Shown piece by piece: positions 6,301-35,585 of a DNA stretch of 64,000 nt. Within the stretch, counting starts at the first letter, position 1; each line of letters opens with the position of its first letter. The notes under the pieces were generated by a model. It had not been told where the DNA came from and did not search any database. It worked only from the letters and a program-made list of their open reading frames with translations. A program made the position numbers and the translations under genes. Origin of the DNA: Botryllus schlosseri (lineage: Eukaryota); the NCBI GenBank assembly GCA_051294905.1, contig CM119372.1, positions 21,638,001 through 21,702,000 of the forward strand, written 5' to 3'.

Positions 6301-9300
6301 CATAACTGTTGGGAATTGTGATCCACTAATGGGAATGTGTTTCCATGCTACCATGTAGTTGACTAAGTTGAAATCCTTGACCTCTCAAATTCGAAATTCT
6401 ATACATGTTTTTACTAGCTATGTGGGAGCAAGGGACCTAATAGATAGTCATCTCAACGATTGACGCAAAATGTTGGCAGACAGTCCGGTTGCACCCGTAA
6501 AACAACGTGCAATGTCGTATGCACATTCCAAAACCATAAAGCATTACCTGAAAAAGTACGATCGACTCTTCGACGATAGACCAGCTCTTCGCGGATGCTT
6601 CACTGATGACGAGCGTCATATAGGATGCGTTTGACCTATCAGGAAAATAAAATATTTAACACTCAAAAAAAGCTAAACACAATTGACGAAAGTTGGGTGC
6701 TACATTCAGCAACAAGTGAACCCATATCACGTTCACAGATATATCCACATTCTCCAGTTATAAAACAAAGAGTTTTCTGGCACCGCAAGAGCCAATGACG
6801 CATATAACTTTGGCATATTAACATGCGGTGTAACCCGGTGTTTGAATGAACTATTTATTATATTCTATGTGGCTCTCCGAAACCGAATACTTATCAATAC
6901 TATCGTGATTTTCTGAAAATGGAGAATACGGCATCATTATAAAATAACGTGAAGATAACGATTCATCATACTGTAAACCGGCTTCGAAGATGTACATTAC
7001 GAAACGTATGGAAAATCAAAATATATTCCAGTTCATACACATACAGCAGAATTCTTAGCACATCATTTAGAAGTCATATTGAACTAGTTTAATCCAAAGG
7101 GAAATCCAAAATTGTTAACCCTTATTGCCTGATAGGGGCGACGGTATTGAAAGAAATCAGTAAGCAATCTATAATTTGATTTTGAATAATAGCTTGACTG
7201 CTTAGGCATGCTTCAAACATTTAAGATCACTACGTATATGTGATGTACACTAATGACGAAAATCTAGGATATCAACCTCATTAAGTTCAATAATACAATG
7301 AGAAACATTTTGATATTAGCAGAGTTCAATTCGCAACTTCGACCATCATAAATATGAATGCAATGTATGATGTTGCCCAAGGCGTGGGTGACACTGATAA
7401 AGAATTTCAACAATTCAGCAAGATAGGAATGCGAATTCGTAATAATATCCGTTATCCGGGCATGTTATTACTAATTATACATGGCTTATATAGTAGTCCA
7501 AAACCACTAACCCCCATTGCGGTAAGTAATAATTATAATATCACAACTACATATCATTTCTAAAGTCTTGAGACGTAGGAATCGATAGATATACAATATA
7601 CATATTACATATTCAAGAAATGGGTGGACGCTTGGAAAGGGTACGATATTTCAATCTTGGTGAAACCAATTATCAAAACCGTTGCACTGGCACCATGCAG
7701 TTTAAATTTGCAGTTATATAGATATAGCCCGTGTTTGCACTTCAATGAGGTTGGCAAATTTATCGAAAGATACGTAATGACAATCACACAATTGGCATTT
7801 TGATCTGTAATATTTATCATAACCTTGCCACGTTTCATCATTTCGTAGCACATTGTCTACAACCACGCCTTTCGAATACATATTTGTCAATAAGAAACAA
7901 TCTATTTATGAACATTGAACAACGACAAGATATATAGCTCCGCACAATAGGTGTGGACACGGCACGTACAGTTCATTAAACTACGACCGATACAAACGAT
8001 GATGATTGAGTGATGACATCGGACATCCAATAAATTTGTTTGTAGTTGAAGGCGACTACAGTCACGTTGTGATCGACCAATGCAAAATTTATTGCTTGCA
8101 TTGTAGGCTAATTATGTAATTTGACAACGTCAAGCCTTGATATTTGAAATTGAACATCTTAGCTTTTCAACGTTTTTCTATCTTTTGATTGTGACATGTT
8201 GCGTATCGCGATTTCGACTCTGATCGCGAGAAATATTAGCATGAAATGTATACCTTACGGGTAAGCTATTTTGAGAGCAAATCAAATCAGTTACACGCAT
8301 AATATATAATCACATGGGTTGTTTACCTGTTGGACGCATGGTTGGTGATAAAAAAATGACTGTGAGAAACGGTACTGAATAGAACCTATTTCTTCTGAGA
8401 AAAAGGCGTGGGACTAACGTTTGGAACAGGGATGGTAAATGCGTATAATCTCACATCATAATGGTAGTTTCATCATCATACAGCCAATATGAAACCAGTA
8501 TTTCAATATTATTCGGAGTTCCGAAGCGTCCTATACCAGGTTCGCGATATATTCGTTATACGTGAGAGTGGTTTGTTTACATACATAATCCTCCACATAT
8601 TTGTTGCGTAGCCTAAGCTCTGTATACCTATTTTTGAAAAGGTTTGTATGTTTAATTTCGTGTCACTATACGAATCAAATATACCGTACCTATGTTTACA
8701 CTAGACGTGATGCGGCGCTTTTGCCAGACACAAATTTGATCGTTTTTATTGTGACATCATGCTGCGATTTCGGGGTATGAAATGAAAGTATTTAGTAAAC
8801 TCCTCCGAAATACTACACGGTAAGTATTTCAAGTAGAACTGCCTAGTAGGAAGTCGTAGCGTGATATTGTCAAAATTAAGTCTTTGGTGCATGCTTAGTC
8901 GAAGACTGCGGCTTAATACAACTGTTTCAAGTCATTTCAAATGATTTATTTTCCCATTGCCCCTTGATCCATAATTCAATATCCACGACTATTGTCAAGC
9001 TGATAAGCTCACAATTAAGGGTGATCTGTCTATGAAAATGCATGACCCTTGTGGTTATTTTGATTAGACTAGTTGCTTGGTCAGATGAGGTTTTCATTAT
9101 TTGACTCATCGTTATACCTATACTATACATCCATTGAACATGACTAAGGACGGTACAGTCAATCTCAATATGATATCAAAATTAAAATTTTAAAACCTCT
9201 TGGTGAACCACGCTATAAATTGAGTTTCATCATCATATTTAAAATGATCGTATATGCTTGTTCTTGATTACGGTTTAAATCTAACTTCTTGCTTTTTAAA

Positions 9301-28323: not shown

Positions 28324-28826
28324 GGGGTGTTCAAAAATGACTTTCTCTCAAATTCTACTGGCTGCTTGATAAAATTGTTACGCTACCTAATTATAGAAAC
28401 GATGCTCACCTAATTTGGCTCAATTTCAACCACTGGAAGCGGAGTTATTGCCGTCGAAAAATTTTGGATTTGAATAAAATTGAATTTACGGTGACTCATT
28501 CTTTAAATATTTATTATACTTGTGCCCGCCGTAAATACTATTTTATTCAAATCCAAATTTTTCGACATCAACAACTCCTCTTCCGCTGGTTGGAATTGAG
28601 CCAAATTTGGTGAACATCGTTTCTATAGACAACCGAACAATTTCATGGGGCAAACGGAAAATTTTGAAATTTTTTTATAATAAATAAATAACTGTCTTCT
28701 CCCATAGCAATGTGACTACTGGTTGGAATTGAACCAAATTTGGTGTACAGGCTTCAATTAGGTAACCTAACAATTTTATCAAGTAACCAGTAGAAATTGA
28801 GAGAAAAAGTCATTTTTGAACACCCC
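28324..28826. mobile_element. Tc1/mariner-type foldback MITE
   Basis: TA|GGGGTGTTCAAAAATGACTTT ... AAAGTCATTTTTGAACACCCC|TA, with inverted arms over 100 bp and a second internal inverted repeat. Confidence 0.8.
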
Positions 28827-29660
28827 TACTGTCGGGTGATCACGACTACAGATAAATATCATTTCCACTAAAGTACGGAGCTTTCTGCTGCATCTTATGG
28901 ATGCTATGATCAGAGGGTTCAATCCAATGTACTGGTAGTCAAGAAAAGTATTCAAGTAGTAATGACGAAAAATTCGATCTGAGTACGAGTTGGGATAGAC
29001 CCTCCAAAAGCAGCACAAAACTGCTCTTAGTGGAAGTAGAATTTGCTCACTTTAAAACTATCAAGTAAATGAGTAGATGTGAAAATCAGTTATAAATATG
29101 CTGCGGTGGGCTGTCAAAGACTGAAAACTGACAAATGCGGACGGTGCAGAGCTGGATTTGCGTAGCTACATGCCAGTAGCTATATATTTTCGATAGTATA
29201 AGGATTTGACCACATCATGCGATACAAATAATGGCTTCGCTATAGAACAGTGGTTCTTAACAGCATTTTCATTTCAGCAATCGAGGTTTCAAATCTTTCA
29301 CAGCCGAAAACAGTGTCAAAACTCAATTCGCGCTGATAATATAATTTTCAATGGAAAGGGTTGCGTCATTTTAGTACTTCAAAAAATCGTCTGGTGCTAC
29401 TCAACTCAAACCATTACAATTAATACTGCTAATCACAATGGGTATCTCACACTTCGCTAACCGTCATTGTCACCCTTACAGCCAATACAAAATACATATA
29501 TCAAGTATTTAATGTGCAGAATATCACTAGTCGACTTCCAAATTGCAACGACCGCCAACCCAACCGATCTGGGATACACCGATTCGGCGACGTACCGTAA
29601 ACATTCGAAAATCAACAAGATAAAACCGGAACAGAGAGCCGTACGCAACATAGCCTAATC

Positions 29661-30079
29661 TAGGGGTTCTTAAACTGAGGTCCGCGGAATAGTTTCAGGG
29701 GTCCTTCAAAGGGTAATGTCGAAACTACAACTATTAGATTTGTCCTTTCACTTAGGTCTACTCTTATTTCCAGTGATCACAAGTCACAATAGCCAATCGT
29801 ATAATACGAGCACCACTAATTGCGCCCTTTGAGCTCTTTCAGTATTAATAAAGCTTTTTGGGCACTAAATAGACTAGATATCAATGAGGTCGTGATTGTC
29901 CTTTTTTCAGATTCCACGTTCTGAAATTTCAGAATTTTGGAACGCCATAAAGATTTTCATATACGTCGACCGCAGAACCCTGCTTTGTCAGTTAAATATA
30001 TTGTCTTGGGCTAGGTCACGACACGGTTTTCACACAACCGCCCAAAATACCGCGCTCACAAAAGTTTTAAGAACCCCCG
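29661..30079. mobile_element. hAT MITE immediately downstream of the DLD stop codon
   Basis: TAGGGGTTCTTAAAC ... GTTTTAAGAACCCCCG; TSD GCCTAATC / ACCTAACC (6 of 8). Confidence 0.7.
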
Positions 30080-30108
30080 ACCTAACCATAAATAATCTAT
30101 CGGTAAAA

Positions 30109-31611
30109 TCAAATCGAATTAATGCTCTTCCCGCAATATGCAGCCAAGTTCGCCTCTCGGAACGCTTCCGACAGCGTCGGGTGAGCGTGACACACCCTCG
30201 CCACGTCTTCCGCCGAAGCCCCATACTCCATTGCCAGCACGGCTTCGTTAATCATTTCGCCTGCGGCCGAACATATGATATGTGCGCCCAGAATTCTATC
30301 GGTATCTTTGTGACTCAAGATCTTGACGAAACCGTCAGTGTCCGCGTTGGTCTTGGCTCGACTGTTGGACGAAAACGGGAATTTTCCGATTTTGTACGGC
30401 ATCCCGGCCTCCTTCAGCTGTTCTTCCGTCTGACCCACCCAGGCCACTTCGGGGTGAGTGTAAATCACCGACGGCACGCAGTTGTAGTCTATATGAACCG
30501 GAGCACCAGTCATACCCTCTACGCATATCACTCCTTCGTCTTCGGCCTTGTGCGCTAGCATAGGCCCGGGTATGCAGTCTCCGATCGCGTACACGCCGGG
30601 ACACGAAGTCTCAAACTTTTCGTTGACTTGAATGATGCCTCTATTGTCAGTTGTTACGTTGATATTTTCCAACCCGAGATTTTGCGTGAACGGACGTCGA
30701 CCAACGCACACCAACAGCACATCGCATGAAAGCGATTCCCGTTTACCATTTGCTGCGTTCTCTACCTCCACAGCAACACCGTCCGATGTCTTTTGAGCAG
30801 ATATCACTTTTGTTTTTAATTTGAAATCCATTCCCTGTTTTTTCAAGGTACGTTGGAAGGTCTTCGCGACTTCGGCATCGATCCCCATGCCGCCAATATG
30901 TCCCAAAAATTCAACGGCCGTGACTTTAGAGCCTAACCGCGACCACACAGATCCCAGTTCTACACCGATCACACCGGCGCCGATTAGAATCATCCGTTCC
31001 GGAACTTTCTTCAGGCTCAAAGCGCCGGTTGAAGAAATAATGGTTTCTTCGTCTACTTCTATACCAGGAAACGGTGTGACTTCTGATCCAGTCGCGATTA
31101 ATATCCTTTTAGTGTCAATAATTTCGTGAGAGCCGTCTGCCTTTTTCACCATTACCTGAGTAGGCGACACGATAGTACCGTGACCGTTCACACTTGTGAC
31201 TTTATTAGCTTTAAACAGCATGGCGATACCGTCGGTGAGTCCTTTCACGGCTGTAGACTTTTGATTCATCATCTTCTCCAAGTTCAAAGTCAAGCCAGAG
31301 ACTTCGATGCCGCGAGACGCGAAATCAGAACCCGACGCGCATTTGTACATGTGAGAATTGTTGAGAAGCGCTTTCGAAGGTATGCAGCCCACGTTTAAAC
31401 ACGTCCCGCCCAGAGCGGACTCTTTTTCGACGCAGACTGTTTTCATGCCCAACTGGGCGGCTTTGATTGCGGCGACATAACCGCCGGGGCCAGATCCGAT
31501 GACGGTTAAATCCGCGGTGTGTGTCGTGGAGTTGAAAGCCAGCGACGTGGCAGATAAAGCCGATCTGACGTTTTTGAACAGTCCGGAGCTTCGTAGGACT
31601 AATGTGGACAT
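30109..31611 (-). CDS. DLD: Mitochondrial dihydrolipoamide dehydrogenase (E3), single coding exon
   Basis: 500-aa ORF with a basic/Ser-rich presequence, FAD-binding GSGPGGY, redox disulfide [16 protein letters not shown]-binding GAGVIGVE and catalytic HPTLSEA. Confidence 0.98.
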
Positions 31612-32151
31612 TTCAAGTTACTTTTTAACCTAAAAAATTACCGAAACCTGTCTGGAATACAGAAAAAATAAATTTTCAACAACCAACTCGTCATACAGCA
31701 AAGTTTGAATAACAGATAACAACACGATCAAGACTGCATTGTAGGCTACATTATCTACTTAGGAGATCAGCACAAACCAGATGAAAAATTGCCATGGGAA
31801 TGAAGCATTTTCGTCAAAAACACACTGAAAAACTCCGCACAAGCAAGCGTGTCATATAAAGATTGCAGATTCAATTCTCGTGCGCTCATAAGAGATCAAT
31901 CCTATCAATTACAGCGTTTTGAGACCCGGCGGGTCAACTCTCTACCGATATGAAAGCGAACAAAAAACATGGCACGAATAGGTGGGCGTTTTGTGCGGTT
32001 TGTCACAGATTATAAATGCAACATAGTAGAAATACAGCCTCTCGAAAAGAAAGTATATCCAAGAATATCTTGACGAAAACGGGACGATCGCTAAATCGTC
32101 ACGAAAAGTAAAAGAATTCACGGTCAGTCCACGCGTACCACGTTGAATCCT

Positions 32152-32478
32152 TCAATGTATCGCCAATTTGCTCTGCGAAGGTTTTCGGGCTTGTGGTAGT
32201 TCCGCCGGAGTCGGCATATGATCGCCAGTCACTTCCTCAACTTTGACCCCAATAGGAGGAGGTTTACCGCTATTTTTAGCTTTCGCCATATTGTAGTCGC
32301 CCGAATCGAAGTATTTCTTGTTTTGACGAGCTAACCGCTGCTGCAGGAAGGATCCGCCTTTAGTCGGGAGACCCTTGTATTTCGATTTCAACATCTCTTC
32401 CTGCTGCTTCTCGACGGCAATAGAAGGCACCGGGTTATCGGGCTTTTTGAACTCTCCGTCACCAGCTTGAGACGACAT
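32152..32478 (-). CDS. ENSA: Alpha-endosulfine/ARPP-19 family PP2A-B55 inhibitor, single coding exon
   Basis: 108-aa ORF containing the Greatwall phosphosite motif KYFDSGDYNMAKAK and the C-terminal P-T-P...RK-P-S motif. ENSA versus ARPP19 cannot be distinguished in an invertebrate. Confidence 0.93.
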   Translation of the reverse strand: MSSQAGDGEFKKPDNPVPSIAVEKQQEEMLKSKYKGLPTKGGSFLQQRLARQNKKYFDSGDYNMAKAKNSGKPPPIGVKVEEVTGDHMPTPAELPQARKPSQSKLAIH

Positions 32479-34090
32479 GATGCAGATTAGTTGCTAGCAA
32501 TGTACTCTCTGTCACTGTCACCATGAAAAATCGTTTGACAGTTTATCACAATAGCGAGAATATGGTAGAAGGTCAAGACTGAAAATAAAGTCACTGAGCT
32601 ACAGAGCTGACAGCCGTGCCACTTCTTGATTTTGGTAATTGCATTGTGATGCGTTTCACATGCAAATCTGCATAGTCGAGAATGCGGGCATTGAGATATA
32701 CCAACAGGAAATCGATTAACTTCCGGACAGAAAGACCGTGTCGGGTAAAGTATACATTTGTAGTGTGCTTACTGTGCTGTGTGAACACGAATCGAATATC
32801 TGTATATTGTTCATAGATGCTATGCTAAAACGTAAAACCTATAAGCCTATATCCACGAACAATGAATCTCATTACCTATACTCTGCAATTTGTATTCCAA
32901 TCTACCAGGCCAGTTGTTAACGTGTAACGTAACATTGGAATCGGCTCGTCAGATTTGACATAGTACCTGTCTAGTCACGAGCTGCAGAAAACCTTCAAAC
33001 GAATATCGTGAATAGCAACCAAGGAAATTAAAATTATAATTTAATCTGGCTCGCAGTCCCCCACTCATGGTACACGAACCTACCTCTTACAGCGAGCAAT
33101 ACAGGATCGCTGTCGAGAATTGAAAATCGAGGGTAGCCTACATAGAACAGAGCATAATTTATTATTCGCTCCTATTACATAACAAAATTATAACCGGAAT
33201 AAAAGATCTCATAACCTCTACAGAACGAAATGCGCTGGAACGATCAGAGGAGTCGATAACAAAATTGATGTCCGGTTGATATCCGGATTCAATGCCGCCA
33301 CGCTTTACTACACTGTGTCGCAATTTTTCAAAAGCTGAGGATTCCGGAGAAAGAAAAGTTCATATCTACATATTTTTGGACACTCAACCCAAAATGCGGG
33401 TTTATATTGCTGATTAGCTCTAGTTTCAAAAGAGATCTATTTCTTTTATGTTTATTTCGGAAATCTATTGCACACTTTATTGAACTGAACATATCAAAAC
33501 AGCTGTGGATCAATCGCATGCGTTATATTTCTGTATACTGGCACAATAGCATGAGCAATTGAGCATGCAGGCATGGGTCGCCAACCTTTTGTATTGCAGA
33601 AGGCTTATGTTGTTTAGCTTGCAGTGGTACACACAAGTTCCTGCGTTAGTCCTTGATCTGACAACTCAAGGGCGATGTACCATAATGAGATGTGTATCAA
33701 CTGCGAGAGGGCGGAGGGCGATCTACATGCATTATGCAGCGTGTCAAAATATGTCAATGCAAAATATTACCAAGCCAAACAGTTTTAGTTTATATTTATG
33801 GTTTCAAGCAAGGAATCCCACCAACCGCTTACTATAATCTTATACGGCATCGGTTACGCCAGAGGCTCTCAAAGGATGGGTCGTGAAGGGTTTAAATCAG
33901 TGGTTCTGGCCTTAAGTAGCCCAAGGAACACTTACGCTAATCCGCAAGCCTTCGCGGAACCCAAATTTTTGCTGAACCATAAAAACATAAGTCTATCACA
34001 ATGCATATCTAACTGGACATCTACACTACTATAGATTGCTGGTACGCAAAATGAACTGTGCATCAACATATAGTGTTAAAACAACAAAAC

Positions 34091-35585
34091 ATCTCCCGCA
34101 TATATTCGTTCCTCGCCAAGATGTCTATCATTTCTCCACAACAATTCGGCTTCCGCAAAAAGCATCAATCCTCGCATGCCCTGCTAACAGTGGCTGAACA
34201 GTAGACATCTTGAAGAAACGAAGTGTGGGATGTAGCATTTTTCTTGATCTAAAAAAGCGTTTGACTGCGTCGATCACAATATTCTTCTCTCGAAATTGGC
34301 GCGCTACGGGTTCCGGGGTTGACAACTAGTGCTCATGAAAAGCTACCTGACTGTGAGATATCAAATGGTTTCGATATCCAACACTTTGTCCTCCCCCCAC
34401 CTTGTTACCTTTGGTGTTCCGCAAGGCTCTGTTCTTGGACCAGTCCTTTTTATTTTATATGTCAATGATATATTTGAAACCTCATCATTGAATACCACAC
34501 TCTTCGCTGACGACACTCACCTCCTATCTCACGCACCTACTACCGCAAGCTTGAATGCCGTCACCCGTGATCCAATGCCCAGTGTGCATGAGGGACGTCC
34601 CATAATAGCCTTGAGTTAACGCTGCGAAATCCCAATTATTGGTCGTGAACTCTTGCGATAACCTAACCGTTGACATCGCTGGCCAACCAATTTCCAACAC
34701 TAAAAATGCCAAATACCTTGGTGATTTACTGGATTCGGACATGTCCTGGAGTGTCACATACAATCACTCAAACCACAACTATCGAGTATGTGGTCTATTT
34801 CGCCGCCTTAGCTACACTCTGCCAGTCAGCGTGCTCTTGATACTCTTCAACACTCTATTCCTATCAAAGTTACAATACGGAATTCTTTGATGGGGTGCTG
34901 CCTGCAACAATACAACTGACCTACTGCAAAAACTTCAACATCGGAACATCCGTATCATTGCCAAAGCCCCACGGGGGCCTGGATGTGCAACTGATAAATC
35001 GCTTCTCAAAAGATTTGGTGTTCTAAACTTAGAAAATATGATGAAGCTAGAAATTGTCAAGTTTATGTATCAGTTTCATTGCGGTCAATTTCAACGGCTT
35101 CTTCACCTTGGAGACATAAGCGCATAAGTAGGCCACAGCACACGCGCGTCAATGAAGAACAACTACCATGTGATCTGGACTGAATACAAGAAAACGCATT
35201 GCTCTAGGACCCCAATTGTGGAACAGCATCTCGCCGGCTATCCGACAGTCGTCGAGCATGTCCGCATTCAAGTCGAAATACAGGCAATTTCTTTTAAATC
35301 AATAGGCCTACTAGAGAGTCTTCAGGATTACCGGACCACAACCTAACATCGACCTCGCCCTCCGCCTCATGCCACCTCATTTTGTCGCTTGCGTCTTATA
35401 TTCTTCTCTGCATTACTTTTAATTCAATGTGCATGCCTCTTATATACTTCGCTTAGGCTAAGGTGGGTGTCTGATCTTAAAGGCTACTACGAGTTGTTTC
35501 GACACCTTCCTATCTCTTCATTGTTTCGCAGTCTTGTGATGTTTTGAAACGATAAAAATATTAATAAACCTGATTGATTGATTGA
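34091..35585 (+). mobile_element. 5'-truncated CR1/L2-type LINE
   Basis: KKAFDCVDHNILLSKLARYG, GVPQGSVLGPVLFILYVND and LFADDT in broken frames; 3' (GATT)n tail; interrupts a sequence that is continuous in the paralogous copy at 18820-18830. Confidence 0.9.

What the first reader, a model, noticed from the sequence alone, without database searches (positions are those of the whole stretch)
30109..32595. Candidate trans-spliced two-gene operon: endosulfine followed by DLD
Seen: both ORFs are on the minus strand, only 540 bp apart, each with a single coding exon. I found no AATAAA or ATTAAA on the sense strand between the ENSA stop (32152) and the DLD start (31611). That interval ends in strong acceptors (TTTTTTCTGTATTCCAGACAG near 31650 and TAATTTTTTAG near 31630) 20-40 nt before the DLD ATG, and ENSA has its own acceptor (CTTTATTTTCAG, near 32580). 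Known: Ciona operons are resolved by SL trans-splicing, with the upstream 3' UTR abutting the downstream acceptor. Inferred: one precursor couples the Greatwall-ENSA-PP2A mitotic/meiotic switch to the E3 subunit shared by the PDH, OGDH, BCKDH and glycine-cleavage complexes.
Basis: partly seen in the sequence, partly recalled or inferred. Interest (0 to 1): 0.7.

Follow-up and report, generated by a model that had tools for sequence, protein, structure and literature searches.

The report
Spliced-leader operon: endosulfine then DLD
Two intronless genes (endosulfine and dihydrolipoamide dehydrogenase) in a sea squirt that is not Ciona form an ordinary tunicate two-gene operon, in which RNA reads put the first message's poly(A) tail on the exact splice site where the second message receives its spliced leader.

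Summary

- **Genes:** The endosulfine ORF (32152-32478, minus strand) and the DLD ORF (30109-31611, minus strand) are intact, intronless and 540 bp apart.
- **Leader:** Public RNA reads show the 25-nt stolidobranch spliced leader (published for Botryllus and Halocynthia, not Ciona's).
- **Boundary:** Endosulfine poly(A) tails start at 31652/31651, directly on the DLD acceptor, with no AATAAA or ATTAAA upstream. DLD ends conventionally at 29493, 20 nt after an ATTAAA.
- **Match to known operons:** This is the intercistron-less operon architecture described for Ciona in 2006, including a single-exon first gene.
- **Conservation:** The pair is conserved in Styela clava and three other relatives. 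It is absent in Ciona and Clavelina, where both genes have introns and other neighbours.
- **Not shown:** A single dicistronic precursor was not seen directly in this species. The proposed mitosis-metabolism coupling has no support.
- **Organism:** The genome is 495 Mb and is not Ciona.

Two other candidate operons in this genome were noted earlier in the scan, unchecked.

The parts
32515..32535 (-). Endosulfine trans-splice acceptor (short T-run, then AG at 32516-32515). The outron lies upstream of it.
   Evidence: 51 bulk-RNA reads (X23) carry a loose end behind 32516. Its reverse complement is a template-switch tail followed by the 25-nt SL, whose last AG overlaps the genomic AG. Base identities were checked. 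Read depth is zero from 32640 to 34018 in all four runs.
32479..32514 (-). Endosulfine 5' UTR after the leader (36 nt).
   Evidence: The depth of about 20 in bin 32443-32639 fits coverage that stops at 32514.
32152..32478 (-). Endosulfine/ARPP19 coding sequence, 108 aa, single exon, the only copy found in the genome.
   Evidence: The FDSGDY motif starts at residue 57. Nearest named relatives are Styela clava (69% identity) and Ciona (64%) cAMP-regulated phosphoprotein 19.
31652..32151 (-). Endosulfine 3' UTR (about 500 nt) with no AATAAA or ATTAAA. It holds the branch region and pyrimidine tract of the DLD acceptor.
   Evidence: bulk reads give continuous coverage. Single-cell 3' reads (X21) reach depth 150-160 over 31655-32048 and drop to 0.66 below 31654. 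RNA contigs link the CDS to at least 31880. One search shows no hexamer.
31651..31653 (-). Cistron boundary: the DLD acceptor AG (31653-31652) coincides with the endosulfine poly(A) addition site (after 31652 or 31651).
   Evidence: 12 X21 reads have a templated end at 31651 followed by a run of about 24 T on the plus strand. The next genomic bases are not A-rich. An X2 contig carries 9 nt of the SL tail behind 31653. X1 and X2 DLD contigs stop exactly at the base after the AG.
31612..31651 (-). DLD 5' UTR (40 nt). It is polymorphic, with an indel allele in the RNA runs.
   Evidence: loose ends of 27-28 nt at 31613 in X1 and X2 are a variant copy of this UTR ending at the acceptor.
30109..31611 (-). 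Dihydrolipoamide dehydrogenase (E3) coding sequence, 500 aa, single exon, the only true DLD in the genome.
   Evidence: other genomic hits are at most 32% identical. The redox-active CLNVGC motif and the HAHPT motif are present. Identity is 78% to Styela clava DLD and 75% to Ciona DLD.
29493..30108 (-). DLD 3' UTR (616 nt) ending at a conventional poly(A) site. ATTAAA lies at 29513-29508 and a T/GT-rich stretch follows the site.
   Evidence: 11 X21 reads carry a T-run before 29493. Searches give the hexamer and its context. Weaker same-strand coverage continues to about 29094, which may be a longer isoform.

Best explanation
This is an SL-resolved dicistronic operon of the intercistron-less type first described in Ciona, found here in a stolidobranch (styelid-like) ascidian.

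**Proposed mechanism**
- Transcription starts at an unmapped promoter upstream of 32516 and runs through endosulfine and DLD.
- The 25-nt leader GATTGGAGTATTTGGTTGTATTAAG is trans-spliced to endosulfine at AG 32516-32515 and to DLD at AG 31653-31652.
- The endosulfine mRNA is polyadenylated at that same DLD acceptor AG without a canonical hexamer, so there is no intercistronic DNA.
- DLD, the last gene, ends at an ordinary ATTAAA-dependent site at 29493.

**Shown:** both leader junctions, both poly(A) sites, the strand, the lack of introns, and conservation of the pair.

**Inferred:** that one precursor molecule carries both cistrons, and how the internal 3' end is made. It may be made by the splicing reaction itself or by a competing cleavage.
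For: - **Leader junctions:** 51 reads carry the full SL at the endosulfine acceptor. A 9-nt SL tail sits on a contig at the DLD acceptor, and two other DLD contigs end at the base after the AG.
- **Poly(A) sites:** 12 poly(A) reads end at 31651/31652 and 11 at 29493. 3'-biased single-cell coverage stops sharply at the boundary. No cis-splice joints were seen.
- **Leader identity:** the leader plus GT occurs 434 times in this genome against 0 for the reversed control. It equals the published Botryllus, Halocynthia and Polyandrocarpa SL.
- **Hexamers:** there is no hexamer before the internal poly(A) site, but ATTAAA lies 20 nt before the terminal one.
- **Relatives:** in a relative, mRNA contig L023 has the SL tail joined exactly after the identical TTTATTTTTTCTGTATTCCAG acceptor. 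Contig L021 starts with adapter plus SL tail, then runs through endosulfine and across the boundary into DLD.
- **Synteny:** the same order and strand, with both genes intronless, are found in Styela clava and in a fourth taxon.
- **Published Ciona operons:** they show the same four traits. Cistrons are juxtaposed, poly(A) follows the acceptor AG, 16 of 18 lack AAUAAA, and 60% of first genes are single-exon (PMC1488885, PMC2760879).
Against: - No read or contig of this species was shown to span 31652, so the dicistronic precursor is not demonstrated here.
- SL evidence on DLD in this species rests on one contig with 9 leader letters plus the contig ends.
- Bridging contigs in relatives could in principle include genomic DNA, because neither gene has introns.
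- No TSS data exist, so an internal DLD promoter is not excluded.
- In Styela clava the spacer is 2.4 kb and contains AATAAA motifs, so the abutting architecture may not hold there.
Confidence: 0.8

Rival explanations
1. These are two overlapping but independently transcribed genes. DLD has its own promoter inside the endosulfine 3' UTR or coding region, and its short outron overlaps that UTR. The match of the poly(A) site with the acceptor reflects one U-rich element serving both reactions, not a shared precursor.
For: - No boundary-spanning RNA was shown in this species.
- mRNA depth ratios differ between runs, from about 1.4:1 to about 10:1.
- Many ascidian monocistronic genes are also SL trans-spliced (PMC1488885).
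Against: - The poly(A) site and the acceptor coincide to the nucleotide within a 500-nt UTR.
- Any endosulfine transcript necessarily contains the whole DLD acceptor.
- Contigs in two relatives run across the boundary, one of them starting with the SL.
- The arrangement is kept in at least four other taxa.
Confidence: 0.12
2. The boundary poly(A) reads are by-products or artefacts, such as internal oligo-dT priming or adenylated excised outrons. On this view the real endosulfine 3' end lies elsewhere, and the two genes are merely close neighbours.
For: - Only 12 tailed reads from one single-cell run support the site.
- RNA contigs of two other runs break near 31880.
Against: - The sequence after 31651 is not A-rich, so internal priming is unlikely.
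- Depth of 150-160 in the 400 nt above the site, with a sharp stop, is the normal signature of a major 3' end in 3'-tag data.
- Bulk reads cover the UTR continuously, and the breaks coincide with indel polymorphisms.
- No other T-run end was listed inside the UTR.
Confidence: 0.04
3. The operon exists in order to co-regulate the mitotic or meiotic PP2A-B55 inhibitor with mitochondrial E3.
For: The pairing is retained across several styelid-like taxa.
Against: - The pairing is absent in Ciona and Clavelina, where endosulfine follows EFR3-MBF1 and DLD has other neighbours.
- The abundance ratio of the two mRNAs is variable.
- Ciona operon genes are reported as not tightly coordinated (PMC1488885).
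- There is no known biochemical link between the two proteins (established knowledge).
Confidence: 0.08

Closest known systems
Ciona intestinalis/robusta intercistron-less SL operons (Satou et al. 2006, PMC1488885; Satou et al. 2008, PMC2760879)
   Same: - Same-strand neighbours, with one SL type used for the first and the downstream gene.
- The upstream poly(A) tail starts right after the downstream acceptor AG.
- No AAUAAA lies before that site.
- The first gene is single-exon.
   Different: - The order of ascidians differs (Stolidobranchia) and the leader differs (25 nt rather than Ciona's 16-nt SL).
- This gene pair is not an operon, or even adjacent, in Ciona.
- The dicistronic cDNA shown for the best Ciona cases is not shown here.
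Caenorhabditis elegans SL1-type operons without intercistronic sequence
   Same: - The poly(A) site adjoins the trans-splice site.
- The operon is resolved by the general leader, not a specialised one.
- Processing of the two ends is thought to be mutually exclusive.
   Different: - The characterised nematode cases keep AAUAAA (PMC1488885), whereas this locus has none.
- The leaders are unrelated and the phyla differ.
C. elegans SL2-type and Oikopleura operons
   Same: A polycistronic precursor is resolved by SL trans-splicing.
   Different: Those have intercistronic spacers of about 100 nt and 23-30 nt, and in nematodes a dedicated SL2. Here the spacer is 0 nt and a single SL is used.
Botryllus schlosseri fuhc-sec/fuhc-tm candidate operon (Nydam et al. 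2013, PMC3691228)
   Same: It is a stolidobranch ascidian with two same-strand genes and a short gap (227 bp).
   Different: No SL was found on either fuhc message, and the authors favoured read-through. Here both messages carry the SL and the boundary is mapped.

Membership tests
Ciona-type (intercistron-less) SL-resolved operon | Adjacent genes on the same strand | tested here: met
   Strand-specific 3' reads place both transcripts on the minus strand.
Ciona-type (intercistron-less) SL-resolved operon | The downstream gene is SL trans-spliced | tested here: met
   9 nt of the SL tail on a contig at AG 31653-31652, and DLD contigs that end at the acceptor; in a relative the SL tail is joined at the identical acceptor (L023).
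Ciona-type (intercistron-less) SL-resolved operon | The upstream poly(A) site directly abuts the downstream acceptor AG (no intercistronic DNA) | tested here: met
   12 tailed reads end at 31651; the AG is at 31653-31652, and the A at 31651 is ambiguous with the tail.
Ciona-type (intercistron-less) SL-resolved operon | No AAUAAA within 40 nt of the internal poly(A) site (typical: 16 of 18 Ciona cases) | tested here: met
   none in the whole 540 nt. The terminal DLD site, by contrast, has ATTAAA 20 nt upstream.
Ciona-type (intercistron-less) SL-resolved operon | An unresolved dicistronic transcript is detectable | tested here: inconclusive
   This was not reported for this species. Contigs L021 (which starts with the SL) and L022 from relatives cross the boundary, but contigs do not prove single molecules.
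Ciona-type (intercistron-less) SL-resolved operon | No independent capped start for the downstream gene | not testable with these tools
   No CAGE or TSS-seq data were available.
Nematode SL2-type operon | An intercistronic spacer of about 100 nt, a dedicated second leader, and AAUAAA on the upstream gene | tested here: not met
   The spacer is 0 nt, both genes carry the same SL, and there is no hexamer.
Endosulfine/ARPP19 family | Pfam PF04667 above its cut-off and the FDSGDY Greatwall-site motif | tested here: met
   (43.5 bits against a cut-off of 29.8). (motif at residue 57).
Dihydrolipoamide dehydrogenase (E3) | Pyr_redox_2 plus the dimerisation domain, the redox-active CxxxxC motif, the C-terminal HxxxxE motif, and full length with an N-terminal presequence | tested here: met
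   Identity to animal DLDs is 72-86% over 93-100% of the length.

The most novel reading that the evidence does not exclude
The internal 3' end may be made by the trans-splicing reaction itself. On this reading the 3'-OH left on the acceptor AG when the leader is joined to DLD is polyadenylated directly, giving a hexamer-independent route to an mRNA 3' end. That would explain why the tail starts on the AG and why no AAUAAA is needed. This was raised as a possibility for Ciona in 2006, and I found no paper that tests it. This short, intronless, conserved locus would be a convenient test case.
Probability: 0.3. Interest if true: 0.7.

Novelty: new member of a known kind. Interest (0 to 1): 0.33.

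Why it matters
- It gives a read-supported example of the Ciona-style, spacer-less operon in a stolidobranch ascidian that uses a different spliced leader. The unusual coupling of poly(A) addition to the downstream acceptor is therefore not a Ciona peculiarity.
- Within one locus it contrasts a hexamer-less internal 3' end with a conventional ATTAAA terminal 3' end.
- The pair arose after the split from the Ciona/Clavelina lineage, together with intron loss in both genes. It is a small, tractable case for how ascidian operons form and how they are resolved.
- It does not support any special link between cell-cycle control and mitochondrial metabolism.

Tried and rejected
1. **Relic leader (retrogene origin).** I asked whether either acceptor is a decayed copy of the SL. 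Anchored alignments against 2000 shuffled leaders gave p 0.15 (window DLD), 0.04 (L022), 0.07 (L021), 0.38 (Styela) and 0.93 (window endosulfine). The local score upstream of the DLD acceptor was 8, which more than 900 other window pieces equal or beat. Not supported.
2. **Relic of an ancestral endosulfine.** I searched next to MBF1, its neighbour in Ciona and Clavelina. MBF1 is on another chromosome. Only chance-level matches lie within 10 kb, the best at E 0.76, and the translated stretch runs into a stop.
3. **Missing AATAAA as evidence on its own.** It is not significant.
4. **Looking up this species' own endosulfine protein in public assemblies,** to find boundary-spanning contigs. It is not on record.
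5. **Folding four candidate SL RNA genes.** Energies did not differ from shuffles (z from -1.5 to +0.1). Only the Sm-like site and short 3' hairpin are shared.
6. **Conservation of the last 120 nt of the 3' UTR with L022.** Identity is 70-72% against 53-65% elsewhere. This is modest, and reads show a polymorphic indel at 31700-31747 inside it, so I make no strong claim of constraint.
7. **Literature search for operons in Styela, Halocynthia or Molgula.** Nothing specific was found.
Full report
**What is in the sequence**

On the minus strand there is a 108-aa ORF at 32152-32478 and a 500-aa ORF at 30109-31611. They are separated by exactly 540 bp.
- The first ORF matches Pfam Endosulfine (E 3.3e-11, above the curated cut-off). 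It keeps the FDSGDY motif that defines ENSA/ARPP19 proteins.
- The second is a full-length dihydrolipoamide dehydrogenase. It has both pyridine-nucleotide-disulphide oxidoreductase domains, the redox-active cysteine pair and the C-terminal His motif.
- It is 72-86% identical to animal DLDs.
- Each is the only copy of its kind found in the genome.
- The 540-nt interval has no AATAAA, ATTAAA or any of 12 other variants on the sense strand. That alone means little, because half of all 540-nt pieces of this window lack both canonical hexamers.

**Which organism**

The window lies in a 495.5-Mb assembly, which is far larger than Ciona. The leader recovered from RNA reads (below) is GATTGGAGTATTTGGTTGTATTAAG.
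- That exact sequence is the published spliced leader of Botryllus schlosseri. With missing 5' letters or one change, it is also that of Halocynthia, Boltenia, Herdmania and Polyandrocarpa (PMC3795323 and its supplement).
- Followed by GT, it occurs 434 times dispersed over the chromosomes, against 0 for the reversed control.
- About 45 nt downstream of each copy examined is an Sm-like AAUUUUGG or AAUUCUGG site and a short GGACC/GGUC hairpin.
- The nearest named proteins are from Styela clava.

The host is therefore a stolidobranch, styelid-like ascidian and not Ciona. Its name is coded in the tools, so I do not assign a species.

1. *Endosulfine 5' end.* Fifty-one bulk-RNA reads end their match at 32516 and continue with letters whose reverse complement is a template-switch tail followed by the whole 25-nt leader. 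The leader's final AG overlaps the genomic AG at 32516-32515, so the exon starts at 32514 and the 5' UTR is 36 nt. Depth in the bin 32443-32639 is what coverage ending at 32514 predicts, and depth is zero from 32640 to 34018 in all runs.
2. *Endosulfine 3' end.* Strand-specific single-cell 3' reads cover 31655-32048 at depth 150-160 and fall to 0.66 below 31654. Twelve of them end at 31651 and continue with about 24 T on the plus strand, which is a poly(A) tail on the minus-strand RNA. The genomic bases that follow are not A-rich, so this is not internal priming.
One RNA contig continues behind 31653 with nine letters identical to the leader's end. Two other DLD contigs, from a variant allele of the 5' UTR, stop exactly at the base after the AG.
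4. *DLD 3' end.* Eleven tailed reads end at 29493, 20 nt after the ATTAAA at 29513 and before a T/GT-rich stretch.
5. *No cis-splicing.* No cis-splice joint was found anywhere in the 5.9 kb. Both genes are therefore single-exon, and no upstream DLD exon exists in this interval.

**The key result**

The endosulfine poly(A) tail begins on the DLD trans-splice acceptor: after G 31652, or after A 31651, which cannot be told apart from the tail. The intercistronic distance is therefore zero. The internal 3' end lacks a hexamer, while the terminal one has a conventional signal.

**Comparison with what is known**

Satou et al. 2006 (PMC1488885) described exactly this for Ciona.
- In all operons they could map precisely, the cistrons were directly juxtaposed.
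- The upstream tail followed the acceptor AG.
- Sixteen of 18 lacked AAUAAA within 40 nt.
- The same SL served monocistronic and operonic genes.
- They argued that such a layout forces transcription across the boundary for either product.
- They proposed two resolutions: trans-splicing itself makes the upstream 3' end, or the two reactions are mutually exclusive on a given precursor.

Satou et al. 2008 (PMC2760879) found about 20% of Ciona genes in operons. Single-exon genes form 60% of the 5'-most members, and endosulfine here fits that pattern.

The locus meets every defining feature I could test. It does not fit the nematode SL2 type or the Oikopleura type, both of which have spacers. The one feature not shown in this species is the dicistronic RNA itself.

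**Relatives**
- In Styela clava, endosulfine (106 aa) is followed on the same strand by DLD (504 aa). Both are single-exon and the gap is 2407 bp.
- Three public run assemblies from unnamed relatives (DLD 85-86% identical where measured; endosulfine 74%) show the same order, with gaps of 529, 547 and 631 bp.
- Contig L023 is a DLD mRNA. It has sequencing adapter, then the last 7-8 letters of the leader, then the 5' UTR. The join falls exactly after an acceptor identical over 21 nt to the window's.
- Contig L021 begins with adapter plus 11-12 letters of the leader. It continues through endosulfine, across the boundary and through DLD. This is what an unresolved SL-capped precursor would give, although a contig is not proof of one molecule.
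- In Ciona and Clavelina, endosulfine has introns and follows EFR3 and MBF1, with no DLD nearby. Clavelina DLD has introns and different neighbours.
- In this genome MBF1 sits on another chromosome, with no endosulfine remnant beside it.

The pairing and the loss of introns in both genes are therefore features of the stolidobranch side. I could not polarise the move. A test for a decayed leader at either acceptor, which a retroposed SL-mRNA would leave, was not significant.

**Function**

Nothing supports a purposeful link between the Greatwall-ENSA-PP2A switch and E3.
- The pair is lineage-restricted.
- The depth ratio of the two mRNAs ranges from roughly 1.4:1 to 10:1 between runs. Depth is a poor measure, but the ratio is not constant.
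- Ciona operon genes are reported as not tightly coordinated.

**Verdict**

This is a real, well-mapped operon of a known kind in a species other than the one assumed.
- Confidence that it is an SL-resolved operon with a shared precursor is 0.8.
- The main rival is an internal DLD promoter whose outron overlaps the endosulfine UTR (0.12). It needs cap-selective 5' data or long reads to exclude.
- The most interesting reading left open is that the splicing reaction itself creates the internal 3' end (about 0.3).
- In Botryllus, the only operon candidate I found in the literature (fuhc) lacked a leader and was attributed to read-through (PMC3691228). A search for stolidobranch operon surveys found nothing.
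- This example therefore adds a clean stolidobranch case, but it does not change the picture of tunicate gene expression.

Noticed in passing
G000 genome-wide; examples L008-L015 around position 1500: The SL plus GT occurs 434 times dispersed on all large contigs, rather than in one tandem array. The intron parts differ between copies. Subsets share both flanks (L010 with L013, L009 with L012), as if SL RNA genes ride on dispersed repeat families. An Sm-like site and a short hairpin are the only shared downstream features.
   Followed up: partly
L020:10001-13101 (Ciona intestinalis AP043576.1): Ciona has a second, single-exon endosulfine paralogue (114 aa). It is followed on the same strand, 440 bp downstream, by a PH/FYVE-domain gene. 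This looks like another single-exon-first operon candidate with a different partner.
   Followed up: no
L027:61-4689 (G000:C3:20889061-20893689): Intronless MBF1 is followed on the same strand, 1.37 kb downstream, by a 937-aa intronless ORF that is rich in acidic, Ser and Arg repeats and has a CCCH-like zinc finger. This is a possible further operon.
   Followed up: no
window 8915-8930 (-): There is an exact 11-nt copy of the leader's 3' end (GTTGTATTAAG); about 0.03 such matches are expected by chance in the window. No ORF follows it. It could be chance or the 5' end of a decayed retrocopy of a trans-spliced RNA.
   Followed up: partly
window 28700-28896: Depth is very high in both RNA-contig runs (about 150) and reads lie on both strands. 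The stretch is separated from DLD by an uncovered gap. It may be a repeat or an abundant RNA.
   Followed up: no
window 29094-29487 (-): Same-strand single-cell 3' coverage (depth 10-22) continues beyond the DLD poly(A) site at 29493. This suggests a longer 3' UTR isoform or a further downstream transcript.
   Followed up: no
window 31700-31747 and 31924: The endosulfine 3' UTR is highly polymorphic in the RNA runs. There is an indel allele between 31700 and 31747, and an extra C behind 31924 in 44 of 50 bulk reads and in both contig runs. The assembly carries the minority form at 31924.
   Followed up: no
window 34329-34619 (+): An ORF fragment resembling a reverse transcriptase of a non-LTR retrotransposon lies about 1.8 kb upstream of endosulfine. 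The low RNA-contig coverage at 34214-34600 probably comes from this repeat.
   Followed up: no
L016:8322-10728 (Styela clava OZ123514.1): The endosulfine-DLD spacer is 2407 bp at 29% GC, with AATAAA at offsets 783 and 1040 and an acceptor-like site 55 nt before the DLD ATG. The zero-spacer layout may have been broken or stretched in this species.
   Followed up: partly
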